DNA from: Fimbriosthenelais zetlandica
Taxonomy: Eukaryota
Length of the DNA: 64,000 nt
Assembly: GCA_977030845.1 (NCBI GenBank)
Contig: OZ365118.1
Coordinates: 20,646,001-20,710,000, forward strand
Direction of reading: 5' to 3'
Position 1 is the first letter of the stretch. Each line of letters starts with the position of its first letter. This document shows positions 33,242 to 64,000 of this stretch, one piece after another. The translations under genes were made by a program, and so were the position numbers. The notes under the pieces were generated by a model, which saw only the letters and a list, made by a program, of their open reading frames with translations, was not told the DNA's origin and did not search any database.

Positions 33242-34882
33242 ATGTACAGTTACACCAAATACTCGCCCCCGGGGACACCCTCTCCCCCGTCCAGCCCCCG
33301 GTTTGACAGTATGACTCAGACTCAGACCCTGACATCAGGCAATCTGACGAACCGCCAACACTCCCATCAAAGTCAGAGGATGACCGCCAGCAGTAAAAGA
33401 TACAAGTACCTCCGACGCATCCTCAAATTCAGACAGATGGACTTTGAATATGCCTTTTGGCAGATGTTGTATTTATTCGTAGCCCCTCAGAAAGTGTAAG
33501 TTGATTAAAGTTTCCTGTATAATATGTAATGTAGAACTGAACTTTGAAGATTATTCTAAGATTCTTTCTTGGACTTTTTAATGAATTTCTTTAATTTCTC
33601 TCCTTACAGATACAGAAACTTTGCATATCGCAAACGTAAGTTCTTTTAGATAAAACTGTTCACAAAATTAATCCCAAAATAAGACCTATGAGATCAGAGT
33701 TGATCAGCTTCAGTAATTTCCCTAAATATCTCTTGGCATATATATGGTTTAAAGGAATAATTCTCAACCTAAATAATTTCAACAGAGGCCGAATCCCCAA
33801 AAGAATTATTTTTCTTTCCAGAGACAAAAGATCAATGGGCGCGGGATGATCCAGCTTTCTTGGTGCTTCTCAGCTTCTGGTTATGTGGTTAGTGATCATC
33901 AATATTGTTTTACCTTCACTTCATTTCATGACAATTCACTGGTCATTAAAACATAGAAATAAAATATTTACTATATGATCCTGTGGGGCATTTGTCATTC
34001 CATGTAAAAATATAACTTTGTAATTCCAGTATCCTCTATTGGGTTTGCCTTTGTGCTCGGGCTGTCCATCTTTGGCTTCATCAAGTTCCTGCTGTGGGTG
34101 ATATTTGTGGATTGTGTAGGAGTAGGTCTCCTTGTTGCCACTTGCTTCTGGTAAGTTTTTTCGTGAACACTCATCTATAGTTTCACAGCTGTTCCTCATT
34201 CAATAGTCCACTGTACAATTCCTAATTATGTTTCAGGTTTGTGTCTAATAAGTATCTCATCATGATGCCGCCTCACGGACAGGACGTGGAGTGGGGCTAC
34301 GCTTTTGATGTTCACCTCAACGCCTTCTTTCCACTTCTCATGATCCTCCACTTCTTCCAGCTGCCCATTCTAAATGGTAGGATATTTCACTAATCATACA
34401 ACAGTCTGCACCCACTTGTACTCATAAAAATCTTGTTAATAAATCGTGTTTTTTTTCAGCGGTTATAATCCAGGACTGGTTCGTATCCACCGTGCTGGGG
34501 AACACACTGTGGCTGTTCGCTATTGGTTACTACATATACATTACATTCCTGGGATATAGTGGTGAGTACAATATATATCAACCTATCACTTATAATCTAT
34601 TACCTTATAAAAAATTTACAGCAAAAAATAAGCCTGAAGGAAACGCTGACCATTCCTTCTAGTTCAGAAATTTCATTATTTTTTCAAGAGTTTAGTAAAC
34701 TTTTGTTCAATACAAAAAAATAATCTTAATATTTTCTTCCAACAGCCCTGCCTTTCTTAAAAAGGACGGAGGTACTTCTCTACCCAATGACTGGCATCTT
34801 CCTCTTCTACCTCCTCTCTATCGGACTCGGGTGGAACATGAGCAAAGCTCTCTGTTATTTCTACGAGTACAGAGTTCTCTAA
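33242..34882 (+). CDS. UNC50: Protein unc-50 homolog (UNC50/GMH1 family Golgi membrane protein), 281 aa, 7 coding exons
   Basis: Exons 33242-33495, 33610-33635, 33822-33887, 34030-34150, 34237-34376, 34460-34561 and 34746-34882 total 846 nt, all GT-AG and in frame. Family motifs: KRYKYLRRILKFRQMDFEYAFWQMLYLF, QTKDQWARDDPAFLVLL, DVEWGYAFDVHLNAFFP, GYYIYITFLGYSALPFLK. Confidence 0.97.
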
Positions 34883-35822: not shown

Positions 35823-36236
35823 CTGTAAAATATAATTTCACCAATTACTTCAAGTTCATTTAATATCTAATACAACTTTGCTCCGGACCATGATTTTCTC
35901 TTCACACACACAACTACAATCATTTATATTTACAAACGATTTACAATAGTAAAATTATCAGAAGAACGATACAGAGAAAAGTACATCCTATACACACAAT
36001 TTTGATACCTTTAAGAGCCCTTTCGCTAACTCTGGCCAGACTTTGCATTGCTGAAATCATTTGATAAAACGTTTCAATTTCAATTTTCTAATGCCACAAC
36101 TTTTTACAGATGCAATATCATACATTTGGTGAAGGAAAACATGAATTTTAAGTCTGATACAAAATAGTAGAGAAAATATACCATATCGCATTTATACATT
36201 TCTGATTGTCCCTGTAATATGAAACATGACTGTATT

Positions 36237-39200
36237 CTAGTTTACATGGCATCTGAAGCAGAATGCCTTCCTGCATATCCCAGGCCCGGGACATGGGGAG
36301 GACGTCAGGGACGAATCATTAATGCTCTTCATCAACTTAACTTTAGGTGTGTACACCGAGGAAAAGTCTGAAACTTTGTGTTTAAGGGTCCTAGCAAAAG
36401 GTGATTTGGACCCTACATTTCCTAAACCATCACTAGGAAAGATGTTATTGTCTGAATCGTCGTCATCACTGCTGGAGACCACCTTTCTCTTTGCATGTTT
36501 TGTTAGGAGCATCTGCCTACCTCTAGACAGATTTATTCCCGGGTCCTTTTGGCAGCTCTTTAACTTTCTATGAGCATAAAGTTCAAAGTCAGAGCTCTGG
36601 GTATGGGTGGATGTTCCGTCCATACTAAGTGTTGCTCCACTGATATAAGCAGAATCTACACTCATACTTCTGCTCGGGCTATTTTTAAATATTTTCGCAT
36701 CAATGGATGTCGCCAATGTGGGAAATGTGCTCTTTTCTTGCTTAGTTTCCATGGGCATGACTTTGGCCGTTGGGATTTCGTTTCTGTTTTTAGAAAAAGA
36801 TTTCTGGATTGAAGTGAATGACTCGTTTTCACTGTATTCTTCTGATTCAGATTCTGAAGAATCTAAATCAGATTCTGAGTCGCTTTTCTCTCTAAATAAT
36901 TCCCTGCTTTTATCTGGAGGTGGGTTTTTCTTCTCGTATGCTGTTAGTCTGTTATTCTGTTCTGTTTTTCTCTCCGTTTCCTCTTCTATCTGATCATTAG
37001 ACTCATTTAAAAAGTCTATCCCGTCCAAGTCCTCTTCCCCCGCCTTCTTCGGTCCTCTCCCCTGTTTCTCAGTGCTGCCCTTGTTATCTAATGACCAAAG
37101 TTGACATTTCAAAGATTTCCTCCTCTCCTTTCCCTCGTCATTTTTGTTATTACTATCCTTTCTCTCCCTGTTCCCCAAACCAGATTGTCGTGTAGGTTTT
37201 TGGGTTACTGAGGCTTCTTTGGGCAAACTTTTAGGTTCTCTCAGAGATCCAAAGCAATTTTTCACTTTTAGTTTTTCCTTGGATGTCCTCAGTGACTGTT
37301 CCTTTCTTGCCAGAGCCAGTCTTCTCATGATCATTGAGTTGTCTTTGACATGGATGCTTCTTGGGGAGATACTTTTCCCATGATTCCCTGCTGAGAAATC
37401 CCCAGTGGAAAGTTTCAGTTTGGCAGGGACAGAGGAACAAGATCTATCTACTAACTCTATTCTCCCAAACCTTGGCGTCAGATTGGTGGCCGCGGCTTCT
37501 TTGCCCCTGGGAGTTGACTCCTTCCTCACTGACTGTAAGCCTTTCACTTCAGTTTGCCTGGCTGCCTTGTTTTTGGGTTCCACTTCCTTGATTTCCTTAT
37601 TTGGAGGGCATTTGTCCACTGAATATGAATCACTTGTCAAATGTGTATCAGAGTTTGAAATGTTGGTAATGCCTCTGGGCCTTAGTGACATTTCATCAAG
37701 ATGTTTTGAAATCAATGGTGTTTTAGGCGACTGTCCACTTAAACCACTTGTTCTGATTTTCAATTTTCTTGACGGATTTTGCAGAAGGTTTCTCGAGTCT
37801 CCCACTATAAAGGTTTCTTCTGTCACTGGGTTAACTTGCGTTTGTTTCAGCACATTCCCATTCCCTGCATTTACTTGAGGTTGAACCCTTGCCACTGGTA
37901 AATCTATGGTAAATTTCATGTTTTCCTCGGATATTTCTCTTAATGCCCGATTCTCTTCGTTGTTTTTAGCTGACTTAGGAACATTTTGTGACTTGGGAAC
38001 ATTTGTCAGTGATGTCTTGGCAGGTGCAGGCTGGGTACTCTGAATACAACTAATATCCAGGTCCATGTTCGTCCTGGCTCCAGGCTTGGTGGGCGTGCTG
38101 GCTGACATATGGTACTCATCTCTCTCAGGGCTGTTCTCTTTATCACATCTCTCCTTCTCCTTTTCAGGGGCTGAGCCTGGCACAGAGGGAGCTATACACA
38201 GCTTTGTCTCACCCGCTCTCTGACCCTCTCTCATCTTTTTCCATTCACTTGGGTTATTCTTATCATTTCGCAACTCATATTCTCGTTTCTCCCTTAAACC
38301 GACATCATTGGGCAATTCTTTAGGTTTTTTCGTTTCTTTCGCCGTCCTTTTCCATGGAGGAGGACTGTCACTTTTCCTTTTCCAATCCACCTGAGTTTCC
38401 ATAGGGTGACCGTTTCCATTGGGCATCATTTTGCAAGGTTGGCCATTGGTATTACCAGCTCTACTTGCAAGTTCGTTCCTCTTTCTTTCCCTTAATAATT
38501 TTGCCATGGGTGAAAGTCCTACTTCCGTCAACAAAGGTTGGTTATTATAATTCCACATTATCATTTTGTCATTCAGTTTCTTTTGAGTGTCAATGGCTGA
38601 AACAGGAATATGTTGAGATATGAAATCATGGGTTGCATGATAAGGGGAGGGGGACATTGGTCGGGGGTTCTTCGTGGGAGCATTGTGCTTTTCATGACAT
38701 GTTAAATCCCTTTTCCTACGTGCTTCAGCCATGGGAGAGTGAGGGAGTTTGAAGATTGGTTGGGAGGCGGCTTGTGCTCCTCTGTGGACATCGCCCCTGT
38801 TTTTATTTAATTCTCCATCCATCCGCTCTCCCAATTCTTTGTCTGATCCTACTTTTTTCTCATCTCTGGAAAGTCTGTTCTCTGTTATTTTTCTCAGAGA
38901 TCCCAAGCTGTTAGGTTTAGTTGGTACGCCCTGCCTTTGGGAATTGCTGGAAGTTTTCCCCGGTTCTCCGAGGGGTCGTAGACTGCCAAGTTTAAAGGGA
39001 GCATTGGTCGTGGAGGAGGAGGGTGTTTCTGCTTGTAGTACATGAGGTGGTGAGTTAGCTTGGAGGATCCGTGTGTGATTGAGGACAGGAGAAGGTTCTA
39101 CGTCATGATATGACATGGGTTCATGTACAGGCCGGATATCTCCCTTCTTCATGTACAGATCTCTATTCACTTCATGCCTCATGTCCCTCTGTTCCATCCT

Positions 39201-41950
39201 ACCAAAGTTCTCACCATCCAAAGCTTCCCTTTCCCCACGATCACAATTCCTCTTTTCCTCAAGATTCACTCTCCTTTTGCCATGCTCTAAATCCCATTTC
39301 TCTTCTTGGCCGACTTTATTCTTCTCACAGTCAAATTTCCTTCTTTTTTCAAACTCAAAATCTTTCTTTCTCGCCCAGTTCAGATCTGTTTTCTTCTCGT
39401 AGGTAAACTGTCTTCCCAATAGTTCCCGTTTCCTGGGATATGGCCCATCTGTGAGTTGGTTTCTGTCGTTCGGCTTCGGTGGAGTCTCCACTATTTCATG
39501 TACTCCGCTCTCAATGCTGAGTGCATCTTCTTCATCTGTGAAATCAGATTCAGAACTTACTAAATCTTCCTCCTCCTCTGTTTCCGATTCTTCCTCCTCT
39601 GAAAAATCATTTGATAGAAGATTCGATGTAAAATCTCTACGTCTTCCACTGACAGTCCTTGCCTGAGAATGTTCATTCCCTCTTGCCTGAAAATGTACAT
39701 TTTTCCCAGGCTGAGAATGTTCATTTTTTCCAGGCAAACCCTCGACATTCTCGCTCGGCTTGGGTTGTTCTTTTTTCCTTGGTAAAACCCAGTTATTACT
39801 GGCAAAGTGCTTGTCAGTGACACCTTCATCATCAGCTATGAGGGTGGTTTGTATTCTCCTGTGCCTTCTCTCTGACCTGCCATCTTGGTCCCCAACAGAT
39901 TTAGGTGACACCTTGAAATTAAATTTCTCCCGAGTGTCGATTAATTTATCCCTTACTGGACGTTCTGCCCTGGCACCCCAATTATCTAAATGAGCAGGTA
40001 TCCTTTGGTTGGGTGGTTTCAAGCTAGCTAGGGACAATTTTGTCAGTATGCCTTTTTCTGACAGCTCACGATCTTGCAAGTTCCTGGGCTTCACTGGAAA
40101 GCCGGTAGTATGTATGCCTTTGTAACCAGTAGGAGAACTAACTTGTGTTCGATTTGAAGTAACAAATGTGGCATGGTTGTGTGGGACGAGAGGGGAGGAT
40201 CGTGGAGAGGTATTATACTCCTCACCAGAGGTGTCGCTGGTACCACGGCTATCATCGTCCCACGCTTCCTCCCCCACGTACTCCTCACTCTCCTGCTCCT
40301 GCTCAGATGAAAACGTCAGAGTAGTTTCTGCAGCTTCCGAGTTAGAGGTGGTCACCTCATACACACACCCTCGACGAATAACTGAAATGAAGTTATATCC
40401 AGTTATAATTCATAGTTAGACGAAAATGGCACCAGTATCAATATATTAATAAATCCAAAATATTAAGTCACCGTGAAAGTTATACTGACTTTCATCATCA
40501 CACACGAAATATTTTTAGTATAAACATTTACTTGGGTTATTTGTTGGTCAGTAAATGTCGCATTGAATAAGGGTATATTGTACTTTTGTATATGGAACTA
40601 ATATATTTTAAAAAGGTCTGTGATTCCTTTAATTCTCACCTCCTTGGAAAGTCTTGTAACTCTTGACATCTGATTCTGAGTACATTTGACCATTGACGAT
40701 GTAGGTCTTATTGAACTTGGTGTCCACTGTCACGTCCTCCTCCTGCCAATAATAAATTGGTAGTCCACATTTTATCACTTTTATAATATATTCTAGCAAT
40801 TTCATGAATTTGGCTACGCGTCTAACGGTCTAACTACTTCCACCATTATAATAGAACGTGTATAAATAACCAAATTTGAATATTAGATTCGATTGTTAAG
40901 GGAGTTGATTCGAACCTCAACTCTTGCCACATCTCCACCATCCGGCTCTTCTTCTTTTAGGGCTTTCTGCCAAAATTTCTTCTCTGTAATACAAAAAAAA
41001 GTTAAGTCAGTCATTTTGTAAAAATAACTTCAAAAGTAGCGTTTAGATTAAAAAGACTAAAGTTACATCCCAATCTTGAAGAAAATTACATTTCTACGTT
41101 GATACTCTCACCTAGCTCTCTAAGACCATTTTTTAAACTAATTTTTCTAACTGCATTTAATTATTTAATTAATATTATTTTTTAATTATTGATAATTATA
41201 GAGGAGGGGTTCACTTACCATCTGGCAATGGAAGAGCTTCCTGCAAGGGGCAACGACCACATGGACGTTCGTCAGCAGATTCCAAATGGCCTGGAAAATT
41301 CAGCATTCATTATGATTTTGAACTTTAATATGAACTAGATCTATTTATTATTATGGTGGTTAGAGGGGAACATTCAGTATGTTCTGATGCAATATTTCGG
41401 TACCGTATCATAAGAAAGGAATGAATATTTTGAACAAAACGTAGATCTACACATAAATTACCGGTACTTAATAATAAAAATTAAATTATTGAAATATTCT
41501 TACCATTATCAACGACCACTACTAAATTTTCAAGGTCTACAACATCGGATTTCAAATTGGGGTTCGAGTACTGCAAATGAGAGAAAAATACGCTACATCA
41601 GTAAGCCAGTCACTCAGCTGGGATACATTAAAATCTCGGTAAGATTGCAATTTGTCTAGTTCAAACTTCCTATACTAGCCAGTATATGCAGCCTAGGCCC
41701 TACGCCTTGCTTGTTTTGAACTTGAACTTGTTAGCAGTTTGTTATTGTGTGGATAGCTAGAGTTCAGAATGGGCTAAGTACACACCTTCTCAATAATATG
41801 CCTCCATCTTCGAGCTAAAGTATCTGTAGACCTCTTCCGTGCTTCTATAAAGTTTTCAAACTCGTCAAGATCGAGATCTTCATCGCTAACCACCACAAAA
41901 TCCCCAGAATCTTCCCAGGACACATCCATGTTTGCCGCCATGGCGGCCAT
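36237..41950 (-). CDS. Scm3/HJURP-like CENP-A (CenH3) chaperone candidate, about 1539 aa, 6 coding exons: N-terminal Scm3-type domain, long disordered region, C-terminal Cys4 cluster
   Basis: Exons (-) 41950-41786, 41570-41504, 41290-41219, 40983-40916, 40742-40640 and 40381-36237 total 4620 nt, with consistent phases 0,1,1,0,1. Exons 1-3 give RKRSTDTLARRWRHIIEKY-SNPNLKSDVVDLENLVVVVDN-GHLESA. This matches the Scm3 signature W-x2-II-x-KY-x7-D-x-(V/I)DL-x6-(V/E)DNGH. The protein ends CPGPGICRKAFCFRCHVN*. Gene structure is well supported; family identity rests on motif recognition from memory. Confidence 0.8.
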
Positions 41951-42789
41951 GACAGGTCGGGAGTGGGCACTGTTGTTTGGTTTTGCGACATCCAATTTAG
42001 TTCCTCTCTTAACCGCCGCCAGTTTAGAGCGCCACTGGAGGTCAATTTTGGCTTTGATTGAACCAAAGATACTAATATAATGATCAACAAACCTCCCTGT
42101 TTTTTTCTCTCTCTATGTTCTCTTAGTCAATATGGACCCCTAGATATGTAGGCTAATTTAAATAGGCCTAATGTAGGCCTATGTAGGGCTTATGAATATA
42201 GATGAGTCCGCAATAAAGTTCATTTATTCCTTCATTCATATAGGCTACTCATATAGGCCTACTACTCACAGTTCTAGCTAGCACAATTTTGAAATAAATT
42301 CTGAAATGTTGATAAGAATTTAACACATTTAAAACTGACAATGACATGCATGGTCAGTGCTATAGACTCCTTATAGGACTAATATTAGCTCAGCTTAGGC
42401 CCTATCGTTTGTTGGTTTTGTTTCTTTGTCAATCTTTTGTTTCTTTCAGCAAGTTCAAGAGGCTCAACATGAGCATTAGGTTCTGCTTGATTAATCAAAA
42501 TAGATCTTTTTCCATTTCATATTGAAAATAGAAACACAGAAGATGATTGGCAGGATGGATGAAGGCAATTTGAACATTTCAAAGAAACATTTTTGACAAT
42601 TAATCTTCGATGTAGACATGCCAAAGTCATAGGGCCTAGTCATGGGAGGAATGACAAGTCAGGGGGCAGGGATCAGGGACAGGGATGGGTGTGTTGGAGG
42701 GAGAGTGGGGTCAGTCCTGTCAGAAAGTAGGCTATGTTTAACCAAACTTAGGGAATAGATCCCTAAATACATTCCCCCAAATGGAATTC

Positions 42790-45139: not shown

Positions 45140-46732
45140 TCAGCCCAGAGAGAGCAATCGGTCGTGCTGGTTTTGCTCTTTGTTGAGAATGTCAGAGAGA
45201 GCTGATAGGGCACTGTTGACAGAGAGGGGCACCCTCTTGCCCAGAGCCAGAAGGGGGTTGTCACGGCTTTCCCCTTGTCCTCCATGGACCATGTCAGACA
45301 GAACCTGAAGTGGCTGGTTCACTGATAATCCCCTTTTACCGAGCCTCAACAGTGGGTTGTTCACTGGTTTTCGTGAGCCTTTCAGGATGTCACTCAAAAT
45401 ACTCATGGGTTGGTTGACAGATAGTGGACCGCGCTTGCCCAGGGCTAGGAGAGGGTTATGCTGTTTCTGTGCACTATACATGCCAGATAAGACTTCTAAA
45501 GGTTGATTGACAGAAAGGGGCGCCCGCTTGCCCAGGGCTAGGAGAGGGTTATGCTGTTTCTGGGCACCACCATACATGCCAGATAATACTTCTAAAGGTT
45601 GATTGATAGAAAGGGGCGCCCGCTTGCCCAGGGCTAGGAGAGGGTTATGCTGTTTGTGGGCAGAATACATGCCGGATAATACTTCTAAAGGTTGATTGAC
45701 AGAAAGGGGCGCCCGCTTGCCCAGGGCTAGGAGAGGGTTATGCTGTTTGTGGGCAGAATACATGCCGGATAAGACTTCTAAAGGTTGATTGACAGAAAGG
45801 GGCGCCCGCTTGCCCAGGGCTAGGAGAGGGTTATGCTGTTTGTGGGCAGAATACATGCCGGATAAGACTTCTAAAGGTTGATTGACAGAAAGGGGCGCCC
45901 GCTTGCCCAGGGCTAGGAGAGGGTTATGCTGTTTCTGTGCACCATACATGCCAGATAACACTTCTAATGGTTGATTGATTGACAAGGGTGCTCGCTTAGA
46001 ATATTCACTATCTTCGTCGTCGAGTGGGTTGGCAGAACGCTTTCCCAGTCGTTGGAGAGGATCCGGGGGAGAGGCTCGTCTCCTCTGGACCATATCAGAG
46101 AGAACACTCAAAGGTTGTGTTACGGACAACCTACCTCGTTTACCCAGAGCTAATAACCTGTTTCTAGCTTGATTATGACCTGAGTTATACATGTCAGAGA
46201 GAACATCGAGGGCACTGTTAACGGACAGTGATGCTCTTTTCATCATTTCATCATGTTCATCGTCATTGTCATATCTTTTCCCTAGGGCTAAGAGCGGGTT
46301 TTTCTGGCCTTTAGTACTATACATGTCAGAGAGTAGATTTAATGGCTGGTTGATAGACAGAGATGCTCTCTTTTCCTCACTTTCCTCATAATCACGCTTG
46401 CCTAATGCCAAGAGAGGGTTCCGAGCTTCAGATTTATCGCCGTAGAAATCAGACAGAACAGACAAGGGCTGATTGACTGAGAGGGAAGCTCTTTTATCTT
46501 CGTCGTAGTCCTTCCTCTGTCGTGGATTCTGTTGGTTGTCTTCAGGTTGCCGTTTGCCGAGCGCTAACAGAGGGTTGTGCTGATCTTTCTGGTGGTGGAC
46601 CATGTCTGTGAGCACGCTGATTGGCTGGTTGACGGAGAGGGGCGCCCTCTTGTCACCGTCATGTGACCAGCAGGCACGGAAGGTGAAGGAAGAGAAGATG
46701 AAGGAGGCCAGCAGCAGGGGCACAGTGGACAT
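45140..46732 (-). CDS. DH44/egg-laying hormone/CRF-family neuropeptide precursor, 530 aa, single coding exon, 14 predicted amidated peptides
   Basis: Signal peptide MSTVPLLLASFIFSSFTFRACWS, then 14 units of consensus xxLS(V/I)NQPLxVLS(D/G)M...NPLLALG. Each is flanked by KR, and the last ends G-stop. Acidic spacers occur in the N-terminal half. The S(I/V)NxxLxxLxDM...LL-amide pattern is that of the ELH/DH44/CRF family. Acceptor ttacag| lies 17 nt upstream of the ATG (exon starts 46749); minus-strand AATAAA at 44762-44767. Confidence 0.9.
   Translation of the reverse strand: MSTVPLLLASFIFSSFTFRACWSHDGDKRAPLSVNQPISVLTDMVHHQKDQHNPLLALGKRQPEDNQQNPRQRKDYDEDKRASLSVNQPLSVLSDFYGDKSEARNPLLALGKRDYEESEEKRASLSINQPLNLLSDMYSTKGQKNPLLALGKRYDNDDEHDEMMKRASLSVNSALDVLSDMYNSGHNQARNRLLALGKRGRLSVTQPLSVLSDMVQRRRASPPDPLQRLGKRSANPLDDEDSEYSKRAPLSINQPLEVLSGMYGAQKQHNPLLALGKRAPLSVNQPLEVLSGMYSAHKQHNPLLALGKRAPLSVNQPLEVLSGMYSAHKQHNPLLALGKRAPLSVNQPLEVLSGMYSAHKQHNPLLALGKRAPLSINQPLEVLSGMYGGAQKQHNPLLALGKRAPLSVNQPLEVLSGMYSAQKQHNPLLALGKRGPLSVNQPMSILSDILKGSRKPVNNPLLRLGKRGLSVNQPLQVLSDMVHGGQGESRDNPLLALGKRVPLSVNSALSALSDILNKEQNQHDRLLSLG
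45433..45995 (-). repeat. Coding tandem array of six near-identical 93-bp units (one is 96 bp) encoding peptides 6-11 of the precursor
   Basis: The anchor cgcttgcccagggctaggagagggttatgctgttt recurs at 45433, 45526, 45622, 45715, 45808 and 45901. Confidence 0.95.
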
Positions 46733-60000: not shown

Positions 60001-62995
60001 AAGACTGCCCATTACTGATCTATAATATAAAGACTGCCCATTACTGATCTATAAGGTAAATCGCACAGACCTGAGCCCCGGATGATGAAGTAGAAATTCT
60101 CAGCATAATGTCCTTGTTTCAAGATGACTCTTTTGGCTGGCACCCTGATAAAAGATAATAAGTAATGAAATATCCAACAAGCGAGTTTTCAATGTCAATA
60201 TCAGAAAAATATGTTTTAAAGAATAAGCCTAAATGTGTATGGTAGAAGAAAAATAAGACTCACTCTTGGAACCAGGCCACCCTGGCAAACTTTTGCTGCA
60301 TGTGTAGAGGGTAGTCAGAAAAGGAATTCAAATTCTGCAGCACAGTCAGCACCTGAGTACAACAGAAACATTGTGTTACTTTTTGTCATTATTTGCTCCC
60401 GAGGCTGTTTCAGATTCGTCTGATTTGTCTTTTGGATGTCATAACTTACCTTCTGTATCATTTCAGGTGTACGTCCTCGCGAGGGCGTGGTGAGAATGGT
60501 CTTATGTTCATCGCTCAGACGAATCTGTATGAGCAAATGAAAGAATCTGAATATATATTTTTTGGTACATCCTTAATTTTTACTGAAGTGCATCACATAA
60601 AACATTATAAATGTAATGACTAAACAAGTAGCGACCTGACCACTTTTATGTTACTGTATTGCTTATACAAGTTACTATAGTCACTATTAGTCAATCAATA
60701 GTGGGGTTACCTCTTTGTTGGCACTAAATTGACTAGGGTCAAACGTAAGACCTTTCCTCTTCTGGATCTCCAGCTGGTAAGCGTAGTCCTCCAGCTCTCT
60801 CGCCAAGTCCAGGAAACTCTTTAATGTTTGCTCTGTGGTGTCCTGCTTCCTGAACAATAATTAAATACCTCATTATATATAATACGAGTGTTTATATATA
60901 CAGTCTGGTATTGCATACCTCGTACAATGTACAAATAGGTATTGAAATAGGCAAGCCATGAATAGGTCACTTGAATAGGTAATAGAGAGCCATTCAGGCT
61001 TCCTTCAAGATCTTATCAAAAGCATAATGCGTAATAACATTCACATCTATATTTACTACATAATGGATCCTGCTAATGGCACTGAACCCATGACCCCTCA
61101 ACTAGCCTGCTTTTGTCATGGGTAATGCTAATTCACCAACTCAATAATTTATAGGGTATTATCAATTTCCTACATAGATAAATACAAATGGAAGTGAGTG
61201 ATAATATGAAATTAACTTATTTACATACTTTGAAAGACTTTTGAACCAGCAGAGAATGAGATAGACCTTTCTGCCCGACCTTCTGAACAGGTTAAAGGCC
61301 TGAAAAAAGAGACAATAATTTAATAAATGAAATAAATTTATATAGATCTTAAAATCATTGACATTCACTTTAATTCAAACCAGGAAATCTGTGTAAAGAT
61401 TTGATTTGTGCAAGATTTTACAATCCAGAATCTCGTAGTGGTCTACTATTCTAGTATACAGTATTTTAGAATTAATATATTTAGCAAGATCTCCTTATGG
61501 TCTTAGCGTGGAGTCATGATAGGAACACCCGGGGATCAAGAAATAAGCAGTTAAAACATCAAATCAGATTAAAAGGATTGATACCATAAAACATAGCGCC
61601 AACTATGGTGAACTGGCAGAGAACTATAAACATTGCATAGCACAAGCAGGCAATATTGGCAAAGGATCGACAAAAGTAGTTTAGAAGTCAAAGGCACAAT
61701 CAAATGATATGAAACATTTGACTAAGAAACTTGGAGGTTTGACAGGATCTTAGTGTGACTCAGGACTGGTCACAATTAAAGCAATATAACCATTTAATCT
61801 TCTCCTTCCGTATATATGTATATATTGCCTTTTCAGTACTACGATCCGGTGAATTGATCCTCTAGGGTAAATGAAATTGGAAAGCATATATGGACAGTAG
61901 GTCTATCCTCTAAGCCCAACCCTCCCCCAGCAAACACCATAATAAATATCTGAAATTTTAAAAAACAACAGCTAAACTGAAGATACTAACCTGACCAGGC
62001 TTGGTGAATCGAGACCGTTGAGAGTCGAGTGTCTGGGTGGAGGCTGAGGGCGTGACACTTCTTCGTAGAGATGAGTGTCGACCACCAGGATCAGGAGTGG
62101 TACTCCTCTTACCCAATGATATCTTACGCTGTGTTGTTTTGTGCCTCACCTGCGGATCGGTAGCACCTCCTGATTCACCAGGCACAAGAGATAGTGAACT
62201 AATCGATCTTGTTTTTCCCTCAGTTTGACTGGTTTTCCTTTGCTTAGTCTGGTCAGTTTTCTGGTATGATTTTTGTTTTCTCCGGGAACTAATTACGACC
62301 TGTCCATCCTCACCCAATCCCACATTATCCACACATTCAATTTTTACTTTAATTATGGGAGTAGAGTGAATTAAAGTCTTTTGGCGCCCACTACGGGCAT
62401 CTCTCTCCCTTCTCAGAGAATCATGGCTCTTGGAATAGTCCAGGGCCTTAAAACCCCCAAAATGTGGTAAACCTTTTTGAGGCCCCTCCCCTCTAACTTC
62501 TTTTAACTTCACATGACCTCGAGTCGTCAATGAAGAGGGCGGAAGTGACGTCATGTCACTGTCTCGAAGCGTCATGCTGGGCATGCTGGTAGAGGGGAAC
62601 CCTTTCTGTCTTTTAAACCTTACATCCATGGCGGTCCTTTTGTTAGATATCTTCAAATTGGGGAACTTCCGACCCAGCAAAGACACTTCACGATTATTTC
62701 CAAGTCTCTCTGGGCAGGAGACGGAAGTGAGTGCAAATTTGAATCCTCTAGATGGTGTCAAAGTGTCAACGACCTTCAACCTTCTGACGTCATTGTCATA
62801 CGTGACGTGGTAGACGTCATTAAGACGCGCCATTTTGAGGTCGTTTTCATGTTTTTGTAACCTGGGTAGAGCGTCCCTGGAGTTGAATCTCCTGGTGATT
62901 GTTTTTCCAAGCACGTGATGAAGTCGGTTCTCACGACTTGTTGAACCGACATTGTGTGGCAGGTCCAGCCGTAAACTCAGATCTAGAGCACTCAT
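57001..62995 (-). CDS. CNBD2: Cyclic nucleotide-binding domain-containing protein 2-like, about 948 aa, 16 coding exons (N-terminus uncertain)
   Basis: Exons (-) 62995-61991, 61299-61229, 60849-60711, 60524-60450, 60352-60264, 60144-60071, 59898-59810, 59609-59380, 59034-58974, 58851-58740, 58613-58513, 58388-58068, 57890-57711, 57542-57471, 57359-57270 and 57138-57001 total 2847 nt in frame. Motifs: KRVILKQGHYAENFYFII, phosphate-binding cassette GQSFGEVALLHHTVRTATV, WIYIVRSGSCKVL, LVSNGCELIML, PFPSEETLQHNLQIEVNWDLFRK. These match the CNBD2 layout as recalled. Confidence 0.85.
59108..59390. repeat. Minisatellite of about five 58-bp units, each containing a copy of the CNBD2 exon-8 end and its 5' splice site
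   Basis: Unit ccaaggttaaagataattaaaggttaatatgtgtaaagttacctgaagtagtgaatca starts at about 59108, 59166, 59224, 59282 and 59338. On the minus strand each unit contains cactacttcag|gtaact. Confidence 0.95.
59998..60054. repeat. 29-bp-period tandem duplication in a CNBD2 intron
   Basis: ataaagactgcccattactgatctataa occurs twice (59998 and 60027). Confidence 0.9.
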
Positions 62996-64000
62996 CTTCA
63001 CTGGTAGATGAAGAATGACTGTTAAATCCTCTACTTCACATATGTATGGCTATATAGGCCTTAATTCCGTTACATTTAACGTCTTTCCTTCTCTCCATTT
63101 AGCTATAGGTCTAGGTTAATATCTCCAAGTGTGAGGAAGGCAAAATATCGTCAAATGGCAGATATGTATGTGGCATAGGCCTATTATGGACTGCCCACTA
63201 AATAATACAAATTCCCTTAGAAATACAATAACAGTCATAGCCTACACAAAATATGTCCTATTTTCCAATAGTGAGGTAGACCTATGTGAGTAGGCGCAGC
63301 CTGTTCTTCTTCATTGACTTGGACTCAGCCAATGAACCATACCGGTTTTCCACTGAAAAAGGGCGTCCTTTCCTCCTTCAAGATATCCCTCACAATGCAC
63401 AGAATAGTTACACATTCTTATAATCCAAAATGATACCACTGCTTTAGCAGATGCAAATCCGTTGAACATTTAGGAATACTCCATGCATGGTAAAGATCTC
63501 CTTCCATATAAGTGTTAAAAAGTGATTATCAGGTACATGTACAAAGGTGCTTGTACAGTGAATGGCTGGCTAGTCGCTAACAACTAAACGTATATCAAAG
63601 GTAGGCCTATGGGATAAGTAGGCCAGTGTGATCGCCTGCCCATTTTCACAGCTAAACCTTGGCTCACCTGGTAAGTCCTTGCTTGATCAGGGGAAGGCTA
63701 GACATTATATACAGCTGAGGTATGGTCAGGCTTTTCTTAGCCTAACTTTTGAGTAATATATCGACGCGCGCACATTTTGTTGAAGTTCTGCAAAAATATT
63801 CACTCAAATAACACCAAAAATCTTTGAATATAACTTATATTAGAAATGATGTCATTTATAAGTGCCCTCCCAGCCATAAGTAATAGTCAGTCCTTGAATG
63901 CCAATGGGACCCAATGTTATGCGGGGATCCACGCTCCAAGTGGTCATCTTAAGATCTTACAACTTTAAAAGATGATTGCTCATTTGTCGTGATTACATAT

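What the first reader, a model, noticed from the sequence alone, without database searches (positions are those of the whole stretch)
41219..41950. Hidden Scm3/HJURP-type CENP-A-binding domain in an invertebrate gene, visible only after splicing three small exons
Seen: exons 41950-41786, 41570-41504 and 41290-41219 splice in frame to ...EARKRSTDTLARRWRHIIEKYSNPNLKSDVVDLENLVVVVDNGHLESA.... Recalled knowledge: budding-yeast Scm3 has HKLADENMRKVWSNIISKYESIEEQGDLVDLKTGEIVEDNGHIKTL. The two align without gaps at W, II, KY, D-x-VDL and V-x-DNGH. Scm3 (fungi) and HJURP (vertebrates) are the homologous CENP-A deposition chaperones, and orthologues are hard to detect in most invertebrates because of rapid divergence. 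Inference: this is the CENP-A chaperone of this animal, and its domain looks closer to fungal Scm3 than to human HJURP. Remote-homology work may already cover some metazoan orthologues, so novelty for this lineage needs checking.
Basis: partly seen in the sequence, partly recalled or inferred. Interest (0 to 1): 0.9.

Follow-up and report, generated by a model that had tools for sequence, protein, structure and literature searches.

The report
Invertebrate centromere-histone chaperone gene (HJURP/Scm3)
This is a real, intact gene for the animal's version of the protein that loads the special centromere histone onto chromosomes; a 2026 paper already showed that most animal groups have such genes, so it is a new example and not a new kind of thing.

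Summary
Three minus-strand exons (41950-41786, 41570-41504, 41290-41219) have canonical splice sites and join in frame into a 101-aa N-terminus. That N-terminus matches Pfam Scm3 (PF10384) at E 4.5e-14, 52.3 bits against a cut-off of 24.3. Each exon alone is sub-threshold (14.1 and 13.4 bits). The exons hit consecutive profile positions (2-22, 23-45), which supports the junctions independently.

The family's diagnostic features are all present:
- a KY motif, split by intron 1;
- an acidic/hydrophobic strand (DVVDL...VVVVD);
- a DNGHL motif, which fits D-x-G-x-L and is split by intron 2;
- a predicted 30-residue helix followed by a beta hairpin.

The gene continues through two small inferred exons into a 4.1-kb terminal exon, giving about 1,539 aa. 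The remainder is polar and low in hydropathy, with no other recognisable domain. This is the architecture described for non-vertebrate HJURPs.

Novelty is limited. Hollis et al. (Sci Adv 2026, PMC13322267) already report Scm3/HJURP orthologues across Metazoa, including an annelid and a mollusc.

No RNA-seq run was listed, and no CENP-A was available for co-folding. Splicing of exons 4-6 and the chaperone function therefore remain inferred.

The parts
41786..41950 (-). Coding exon 1 (165 nt, 55 aa). It holds the ATG, an acidic leader and most of the scm3 alpha-helix, and ends on the K of the KY motif.
   Evidence: Alone it matches Scm3 profile positions 2-22 at 14.1 bits. The helix spans residues 28-57 with pLDDT above 90.
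41504..41570 (-). Coding exon 2 (67 nt). It starts on the Y of KY, encodes the acidic/hydrophobic beta region (SDVVDLENLVVVVDN), and ends with the first base of the Gly codon of DNGH.
   Evidence: Alone it matches Scm3 profile positions 23-45 at 13.4 bits. Strands are predicted at residues 65-67 and 72-75.
41219..41290 (-). Coding exon 3 (72 nt). It completes the DNGHL (D-x-G-x-L) motif and the end of the scm3 domain.
   Evidence: The spliced protein matches Scm3 profile positions 2-51 of 53 over residues 35-83.
41274..41848 (-). Genomic span of the scm3 (CENP-A/H4-binding) domain, residues 35-83, interrupted by introns 1 and 2.
   Evidence: Pfam PF10384 at E 4.5e-14, 52.3 bits, cut-off 24.3. 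A PDB profile search gives 2l5a 1.6e-14 and 2yfv 2.9e-14.
40916..40983 (-). Inferred coding exon 4 (68 nt), with acceptor TATTACAG| and a weak donor GAG|GTTCGA.
   Evidence: Frame bookkeeping only. There is no RNA support. If this donor is not used, the frame stops 11 codons later.
40640..40742 (-). Inferred coding exon 5 (103 nt), with acceptor TTGGCAG| and donor GAG|GTGAGA.
   Evidence: It is open in the required phase. There is no Pfam hit and no RNA support.
36237..40381 (-). Large terminal exon (4,145 nt, about 1,381 aa, stop TAG at 36239-36237). It encodes a polar tail of low hydropathy that ends in a C-x5-C-x4-C-x2-C cluster.
   Evidence: The stop-free run is 1,390 codons, against at most 250 in 20 shuffles. 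The frame opens 31 nt upstream of the acceptor, and the first in-frame ATG is codon 395. The phase matches exon 5. There is no Pfam family and no homologue.
35859..35864 (-). Possible polyadenylation signal ATTAAA, 372 nt after the stop.
   Evidence: Pattern only. A convergent UNC-50 gene on the + strand (exons at 34241-34390 and 34492-34560) limits the room for further 3' exons.

Best explanation
This is the Scm3/HJURP orthologue of this invertebrate. Other agents of the scan judged the genome to be probably annelid. The gene has about six exons on the minus strand (41950 to 36237) and encodes about 1,539 aa.

The N-terminal scm3 domain (residues about 28-83) most likely binds one pre-nucleosomal CENP-A/H4 dimer, by analogy with the solved Scm3 and HJURP complexes:
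- The long helix lies antiparallel along the CENP-A alpha-2 helix (CATD), with K55-Y56 contacting a conserved CENP-A glutamate.
- The following acidic/hydrophobic strand and the DNGHL turn pair with the CENP-A L1/beta region.
- Together these shield the histone's DNA-binding and tetramerisation surfaces until deposition.

The roughly 1,450-aa polar tail has acidic blocks, KR-rich patches and 24 S/T-P sites. It would carry the lineage-specific functions: recruitment to centromeres (Mis18 complex and/or CENP-C), DNA binding and cell-cycle control.

Shown here: the exons, the frame, domain membership and the predicted secondary structure. Inferred: splicing of exons 4-6, CENP-A binding, centromere targeting and everything about the tail.
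For: - Canonical splice sites and an uninterrupted frame.
- Pfam Scm3 at E 4.5e-14, 52.3 bits against a 24.3 cut-off.
- The exons hit consecutive profile segments (2-22 then 23-45), and only the spliced product passes the threshold.
- PDB sequence hits are Scm3 chains 2l5a and 2yfv: single sequence 5.8e-4 and 2.5e-3; profile 1.6e-14 and 2.9e-14.
- An exhaustive phmmer scan of 1.84 billion representatives gives three real hits, all Scm3-domain proteins, plus one repeat artefact.
- AlphaFold2 predicts helix 28-57 (pLDDT 91-94) and then strands 65-67 and 72-75. Hollis et al. describe the scm3 fold as a helix of about 25 aa followed by a strand of about 10 aa.
- The KY motif, the acidic/short-hydrophobic patch and the DXGXL motif named as family signatures are all present.
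- The tail is polar, has no other domain and has no detectable homologue. Hollis et al. describe non-vertebrate HJURPs the same way.
- The big exon is open for 394 codons before its first ATG, so it cannot stand alone as a gene.
- Only one copy is present in the window.
Against: - There is no transcript evidence: no sequencing run was listed for this DNA.
- The exon 4 donor (GTTCGA) is weak, so exons 4-5 could be skipped (exon 3 and exon 6 share phase 1) or a short isoform could exist.
- No relative from the same lineage could be retrieved to show conservation.
- Structure searches with the monomer model were uninformative. Foldseek's best hit is K. lactis Scm3 (2yfv_C) but only at E 4.1. VIA-align found only generic long helices at Z 3.6 or less.
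- No CENP-A gene of this genome was available, so the interface could not be modelled.
- Whether the genome has a second scm3-domain gene is unknown.
Confidence: 0.87

Rival explanations
1. The scm3 domain is real but the gene model is different. One version makes only a short Scm3-like protein of about 135-160 aa from exons 1-4 or 1-5, as in fungi. Another has the 4.1-kb open frame belonging to a separate transcript.
For: The exon 4 donor GTTCGA is weak, and read-through stops after 11 codons. The nearest sequence relatives are short proteins of 127-139 aa. No RNA data are available.
Against: The large exon has a good acceptor (CATTTCAG|). Its frame opens only 31 nt upstream of that acceptor. 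It has no ATG for 394 codons and is in the phase left by exon 5, which is also the phase left by exon 3. A 1,390-codon open frame cannot be chance, since shuffles give at most 250. No other upstream exons are apparent between it and the scm3 exons.
Confidence: 0.08
2. It is an scm3-domain paralogue or a decaying copy, not the functional CENP-A chaperone. The true chaperone would be encoded elsewhere in the genome.
For: Only this 64-kb window could be searched for copies. Expression is untested.
Against: The frame is intact over 1,539 codons. All signature motifs are kept. Hollis et al. report a single strong hit in most deuterostome genomes they searched.
Confidence: 0.04
3. The match is a chance resemblance produced by picking exon combinations.
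Against: E 4.5e-14 would survive even a million alternative splice combinations. Two exons independently hit adjacent halves of the profile in the correct order. The splice sites are canonical.
Confidence: 0.01

Closest known systems
Metazoan HJURP candidates of Hollis et al. 2026 (Sci Adv, PMC13322267), e.g. Capitella teleta ELT94853.1 (annelid) and Biomphalaria glabrata KAI8798300.1 (mollusc)
   Same: An N-terminal scm3 domain is the only conserved module. The rest is long, polar and highly divergent with no homology outside the domain. The lineage context is the same (protostome, probably annelid).
   Different: I could not fetch those sequences, so direct identity is unknown. The Capitella candidate was found only at PSI-BLAST E 4e-3. 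This gene passes the plain Pfam model at 4.5e-14 and keeps the full DXGXL motif, which that paper says is relaxed in metazoans.
Fungal Scm3 (S. cerevisiae, PDB 2L5A; K. lactis, PDB 2YFV)
   Same: They give the best pairwise sequence matches. The alignment is gap-free with 16 of 48 identities, including W, II, KY, D-x-VDL and V-x-DNGH. The helix-then-strand layout is the same.
   Different: Fungal Scm3 proteins are about 130-260 aa. This protein is about 1,539 aa, is encoded by an intron-split gene, and carries a long tail.
Human HJURP (PDB 3R45 chain C)
   Same: The domain sits at the N-terminus of a long, mostly polar protein. Both share the I-E-K-Y-x-x-P core.
   Different: The pairwise match is only marginal (E 0.92, 13 bits). 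The human protein has no DNGH-type motif in the aligned stretch. No Pfam family beyond Scm3 is detectable in this protein's tail at E up to 1. By my own recollection, not checked here, that library includes the vertebrate HJURP mid and C-terminal families.
Drosophila CAL1 (PDB 6XWV/6XWS)
   Same: It has the same proposed role and is now argued to be a diverged scm3 orthologue.
   Different: No CAL1 chain was hit at E up to 10 with either the sequence or the profile. A subset of Diptera has lost constraint on the KY motif, with DF at that position in D. melanogaster. This protein keeps KY.

Membership tests
Scm3/HJURP (scm3 domain, Pfam PF10384) | Significant match to the curated scm3 profile above its gathering score | tested here: met
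   52.3 bits against a cut-off of 24.3, E 4.5e-14, covering profile positions 2-51 of 53.
Scm3/HJURP (scm3 domain, Pfam PF10384) | An alpha-helix of about 25 aa followed by a beta strand of about 10 aa | tested here: met
   The AlphaFold2 monomer model has helix 28-57 (pLDDT 91-94) and strands 65-67 and 72-75 (pLDDT about 78). This is a prediction only.
Scm3/HJURP (scm3 domain, Pfam PF10384) | A KY motif at the end of the helix, which contacts a conserved CENP-A glutamate | tested here: met
   K55-Y56 is present and aligns to the KY of Scm3 and HJURP. The motif is split by intron 1.
Scm3/HJURP (scm3 domain, Pfam PF10384) | A patch of acidic and short hydrophobic residues after KY, plus the ancestral DXGXL motif | tested here: met
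   S63-D76 reads SDVVDLENLVVVVD, followed by D76-N-G-H-L80. D64, D67 and L68 are invariant, and W49, D76, N77 and G78 are at least 90% conserved, in the 25-sequence alignment.
Scm3/HJURP (scm3 domain, Pfam PF10384) | Reverse search returns Scm3/HJURP proteins | tested here: met
   The phmmer scan of 1.84 billion representatives returned a yeast Scm3, a Neocallimastix Scm3-domain protein and a metagenomic Scm3-domain protein. The only other hit was a repeat artefact.
Scm3/HJURP (scm3 domain, Pfam PF10384) | Specific binding of the CENP-A/H4 dimer (heterotrimer structure or prediction) | not testable with these tools
   This genome's CENP-A is not in the window, and the structure tool folds single chains of window sequence only.
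Scm3/HJURP (scm3 domain, Pfam PF10384) | Centromere localisation and requirement for CENP-A deposition | not testable with these tools
   This needs an experiment.
Scm3/HJURP (scm3 domain, Pfam PF10384) | Expressed and spliced as modelled | not testable with these tools
   No sequencing run was listed for this DNA.
Scm3/HJURP (scm3 domain, Pfam PF10384) | Single orthologue per genome | tested here: inconclusive
   Only one copy is found within the 64-kb window. The rest of the genome could not be searched.
Vertebrate-type HJURP architecture | Conserved central and C-terminal HJURP domains after the scm3 domain | tested here: not met
   No Pfam family is found at E up to 1 in the 1,375-aa tail, and self-BLAST finds no internal repeat. 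The protein is therefore filed under the broad Scm3/HJURP family, not the vertebrate subtype.
Dipteran CAL1 | Sequence similarity to CAL1 chains | tested here: not met
   No CAL1 chain is hit at E up to 10.

The most novel reading that the evidence does not exclude
This lineage may have kept an unusually slow-evolving scm3 domain that is almost fungal in sequence, with full KY, DVVDL and DNGHL motifs. That would make it a 'stepping-stone' sequence for linking the very divergent animal HJURPs. Its unmatched tail, ending in a C-x5-C-x4-C-x2-C cluster, could be a lineage-specific centromere-targeting or zinc-binding module that has not been described for any HJURP.
Probability: 0.2. Interest if true: 0.45.

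Novelty: new member of a known kind. Interest (0 to 1): 0.3.

Why it matters
The finding gives a clean HJURP/Scm3 gene model, supported by the Pfam profile, for an apparently unannotated invertebrate genome. The large exon has no counterpart among 5.8 billion catalogued proteins. It adds a second, much better-scoring data point for the annelid-type lineages, where the published candidate was found only at a marginal E-value. It also shows concretely why such genes are missed: the 50-residue domain is cut by two introns exactly inside its two signature motifs, so no single exon passes a profile threshold. The near-fungal sequence of the domain could help bridge remote-homology searches. It does not change the current picture that scm3-domain chaperones are broadly retained in animals.

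Tried and rejected
- **RNA evidence.** Two searches for sequencing runs (RNA, then any kind) listed none, so no reads could be laid on the locus.
- **Relatives of the tail.** A word-index search with the 1,375-aa exon and a second search on its last 120 residues found nothing. Pfam found nothing. ESM Atlas feature hits were below 0.8 and looked like generic disordered nuclear proteins.
- **Exon 1 alone in the Atlas.** Nothing relevant was found.
- **Profile search for short relatives.** It returned essentially only fungal Scm3, because candidates are limited to 0.55-1.75 times the query length. Long metazoan HJURPs were therefore out of reach, and a spliced full-length protein has no reference to hand in.
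- **Structure comparison of the monomer model.** Foldseek's top hit was K. lactis Scm3 but was not significant, at E 4.1. VIA-align wide gave only generic single helices at Z 3.6 or less. A helix plus hairpin that folds only on its partner is a poor search object, so I give this no weight either way.
- **Rfam scan of the window.** No match was found.
- **Nearest hit P0002.** It lies on short, gene-dense, intron-less metagenomic contigs. It is probably a microbial eukaryote, not a relative of this animal.
- **P0001.** It is a tandem-repeat artefact matching only 'ARRW...'.
- **Possible C-terminal extension.** I considered a read-on through the GTAAAC just before the stop into a 14-codon open stretch at 36053-36012. 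I dropped it as unsupported, and the convergent UNC-50 gene leaves little room.

The 101-aa spliced sequence had to be typed into the tools, because a spliced product has no reference.

Full report
**1. The observation**

- Exon 1 (41950-41786) begins at an ATG in good context and ends AAG|GTGTGT.
- Exon 2 (41570-41504) follows TTTGCAG| and ends ATG|GTAAGA.
- Exon 3 (41290-41219) follows TTTCCAG| and ends ATG|GTAAGT.

Joined, they read without a stop as 101 residues containing exactly the quoted stretch. HMMER aligns residues 35-82 to the Scm3 part of PDB chain 2l5a_A without a gap, with 16 of 48 identities.

**2. Is it more than chance?**

Yes. The spliced N-terminus hits Pfam Scm3 (PF10384) at E 4.5e-14. 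The score is 52.3 bits against a curated cut-off of 24.3, covering profile positions 2-51 of 53.

The exons taken singly score 14.1 bits (profile 2-22) and 13.4 bits (profile 23-45), both below threshold. It also supports the junctions independently of splice-site consensus, because two separate pieces of DNA hit adjacent halves of one profile in the right order and phase.

Intron 1 falls exactly between the K and the Y of the KY motif. Intron 2 splits the Gly codon of DNGH.

**3. The whole gene**

Following the frame downstream I infer:
- exon 4 at 40983-40916, with a weak donor GAG|GTTCGA;
- exon 5 at 40742-40640;
- a terminal exon at 40381-36237.

The model is 4,620 nt, or 1,539 codons, with a single terminal stop.

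The terminal exon is certainly coding. Its stop-free run is 1,390 codons, against at most 250 in shuffled windows. The frame opens 31 nt upstream of the acceptor CATTTCAG|, and there is no in-frame ATG for 394 codons, so it must be joined to upstream exons.

Exons 3 and 5 both leave phase 1, which is the phase exon 6 needs. Skipping exons 4-5 would therefore also stay in frame, and only RNA data can settle this.

An ATTAAA lies 372 nt after the stop. A convergent UNC-50 gene on the plus strand (34241-34560) bounds the locus. No second copy of the N-terminal exons exists in the window.

**4. What the protein looks like**

AlphaFold2, run with a 25-sequence alignment, predicts a 30-residue helix (28-57, pLDDT 91-94). 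It is followed by a beta hairpin (65-67 and 72-75, pLDDT about 78). Hollis et al. describe the scm3 fold as a helix of about 25 aa followed by a strand of about 10 aa.

The family signatures named in that paper are all present:
- KY (K55-Y56);
- a patch of acidic and short hydrophobic residues after it (SDVVDLENLVVVVD);
- DXGXL (D76-N-G-H-L80).

The remaining 1,450 or so residues are rich in S, E, K, R, P, D and N, with mean hydropathy below zero in every 50-residue window. Two strongly acidic blocks, KR-rich patches and 24 S/T-P sites are present. There is no Pfam family, no internal repeat and no detectable homologue. The protein ends in a C-x5-C-x4-C-x2-C cluster.

**5. Relatives**

An exhaustive phmmer scan of 1.84 billion representative proteins gave only four hits at E up to 1e-3:
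- a tandem-repeat artefact;
- a 127-aa metagenomic Scm3-domain protein on intron-less, gene-dense contigs, probably from a microbial eukaryote;
- the Scm3 of the yeast Huiozyma (Kazachstania) naganishii;
- a Neocallimastix Scm3-domain protein.

A profile built from these hits the two solved Scm3 chains at about 1e-14. Human HJURP is matched only marginally (E 0.92), and CAL1 is not matched at all.

The large exon finds nothing at all in the 5.8-billion-protein collection, so neither this genome's proteins nor any close relative's appear to be catalogued there.

**6. Mechanism (inferred from family membership)**

The helix would lie antiparallel on the CENP-A alpha-2 helix (CATD), with KY contacting a conserved glutamate. 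The strand region would pair with the CENP-A L1/beta segment. This would hold a CENP-A/H4 dimer in pre-nucleosomal form. The tail would mediate recruitment, DNA binding and cell-cycle control. None of this could be tested here, because the window holds no CENP-A and no expression data were available.

**7. Comparison with what is known, and novelty**

Hollis et al. (Sci Adv 2026, PMC13322267) used PSI-BLAST and HMM searches, HHpred and AlphaFold-Multimer to show that Scm3/HJURP orthologues exist in most metazoan clades. Their candidates include:
- Capitella teleta (annelid, ELT94853.1, PSI-BLAST E 4e-3);
- Biomphalaria glabrata (mollusc);
- Schistosoma, Priapulus, Trichoplax, a cnidarian and a sponge.

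They note that these proteins vary greatly in length and share almost nothing outside the scm3 domain. Other agents of this scan judged this genome to be probably annelid. I did not verify that.

The present gene is therefore a new member of a known kind. Its modest points of interest are:
- a strong, almost fungal-like domain that keeps the DXGXL motif, which that paper describes as relaxed in animals;
- the placement of introns inside both signature motifs;
- the unmatched Cys-ended tail.

**8. What led nowhere**

Structure-library searches with the monomer model were uninformative. Foldseek's best hit was K. lactis Scm3 at E 4.1, and VIA-align returned only generic helices. Atlas look-ups and the Rfam scan also gave nothing. 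The length filter of the word-index search kept long metazoan HJURPs out of reach.

Noticed in passing
window 36237-36293 (minus strand): The protein ends ...C-x5-C-x4-C-x2-C-H-V-N (Cys 1522, 1528, 1533, 1536). The last four residues, CHVN, have a Cys at -4 like a CaaX box, though H and N are atypical for one. A GTAAAC sits just before the stop codon. No homologue or family was found for this end.
   Followed up: partly
window 34241-34390 and 34492-34560 (plus strand): Two exons of a UNC-50 family gene (Pfam PF05216, E 1.9e-13 and 1.2e-6) lie convergent with the HJURP-like gene. They limit its 3' UTR to roughly 1 kb or less.
   Followed up: partly
window 45140-46732 (minus strand): A 530-aa single-exon ORF sits upstream of the HJURP-like gene; another note calls it a multi-copy ELH/DH44-type peptide precursor. 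Pfam gave only whole-sequence matches to TPP_enzyme_N, YebO and SelB-wing_1 with no single stretch passing on its own. These are probably artefacts of summing over a repetitive sequence.
   Followed up: no
L001:1027-1410 (JGI 3300062774), also L002 and L003: The nearest sequence relative of the scm3 domain (41-43% identity) is a 127-aa intron-less Scm3-domain protein on short, gene-dense metagenomic contigs. It is presumably the Scm3 of an uncharacterised microbial eukaryote.
   Followed up: partly
window 41951-42060 (minus strand, upstream of the ATG): The putative 5' region holds an inverted CCAAT box (AAATTGG, about 50 nt upstream of the ATG), two GGCG-rich elements (TGGCGC, TGGCGGCGG) and an out-of-frame upstream ATG at about 41990. 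This would fit a cell-cycle promoter, but it is pattern-spotting only.
   Followed up: no
window 61958-63001 (minus strand): A 347-aa ORF with no Pfam match.
   Followed up: no
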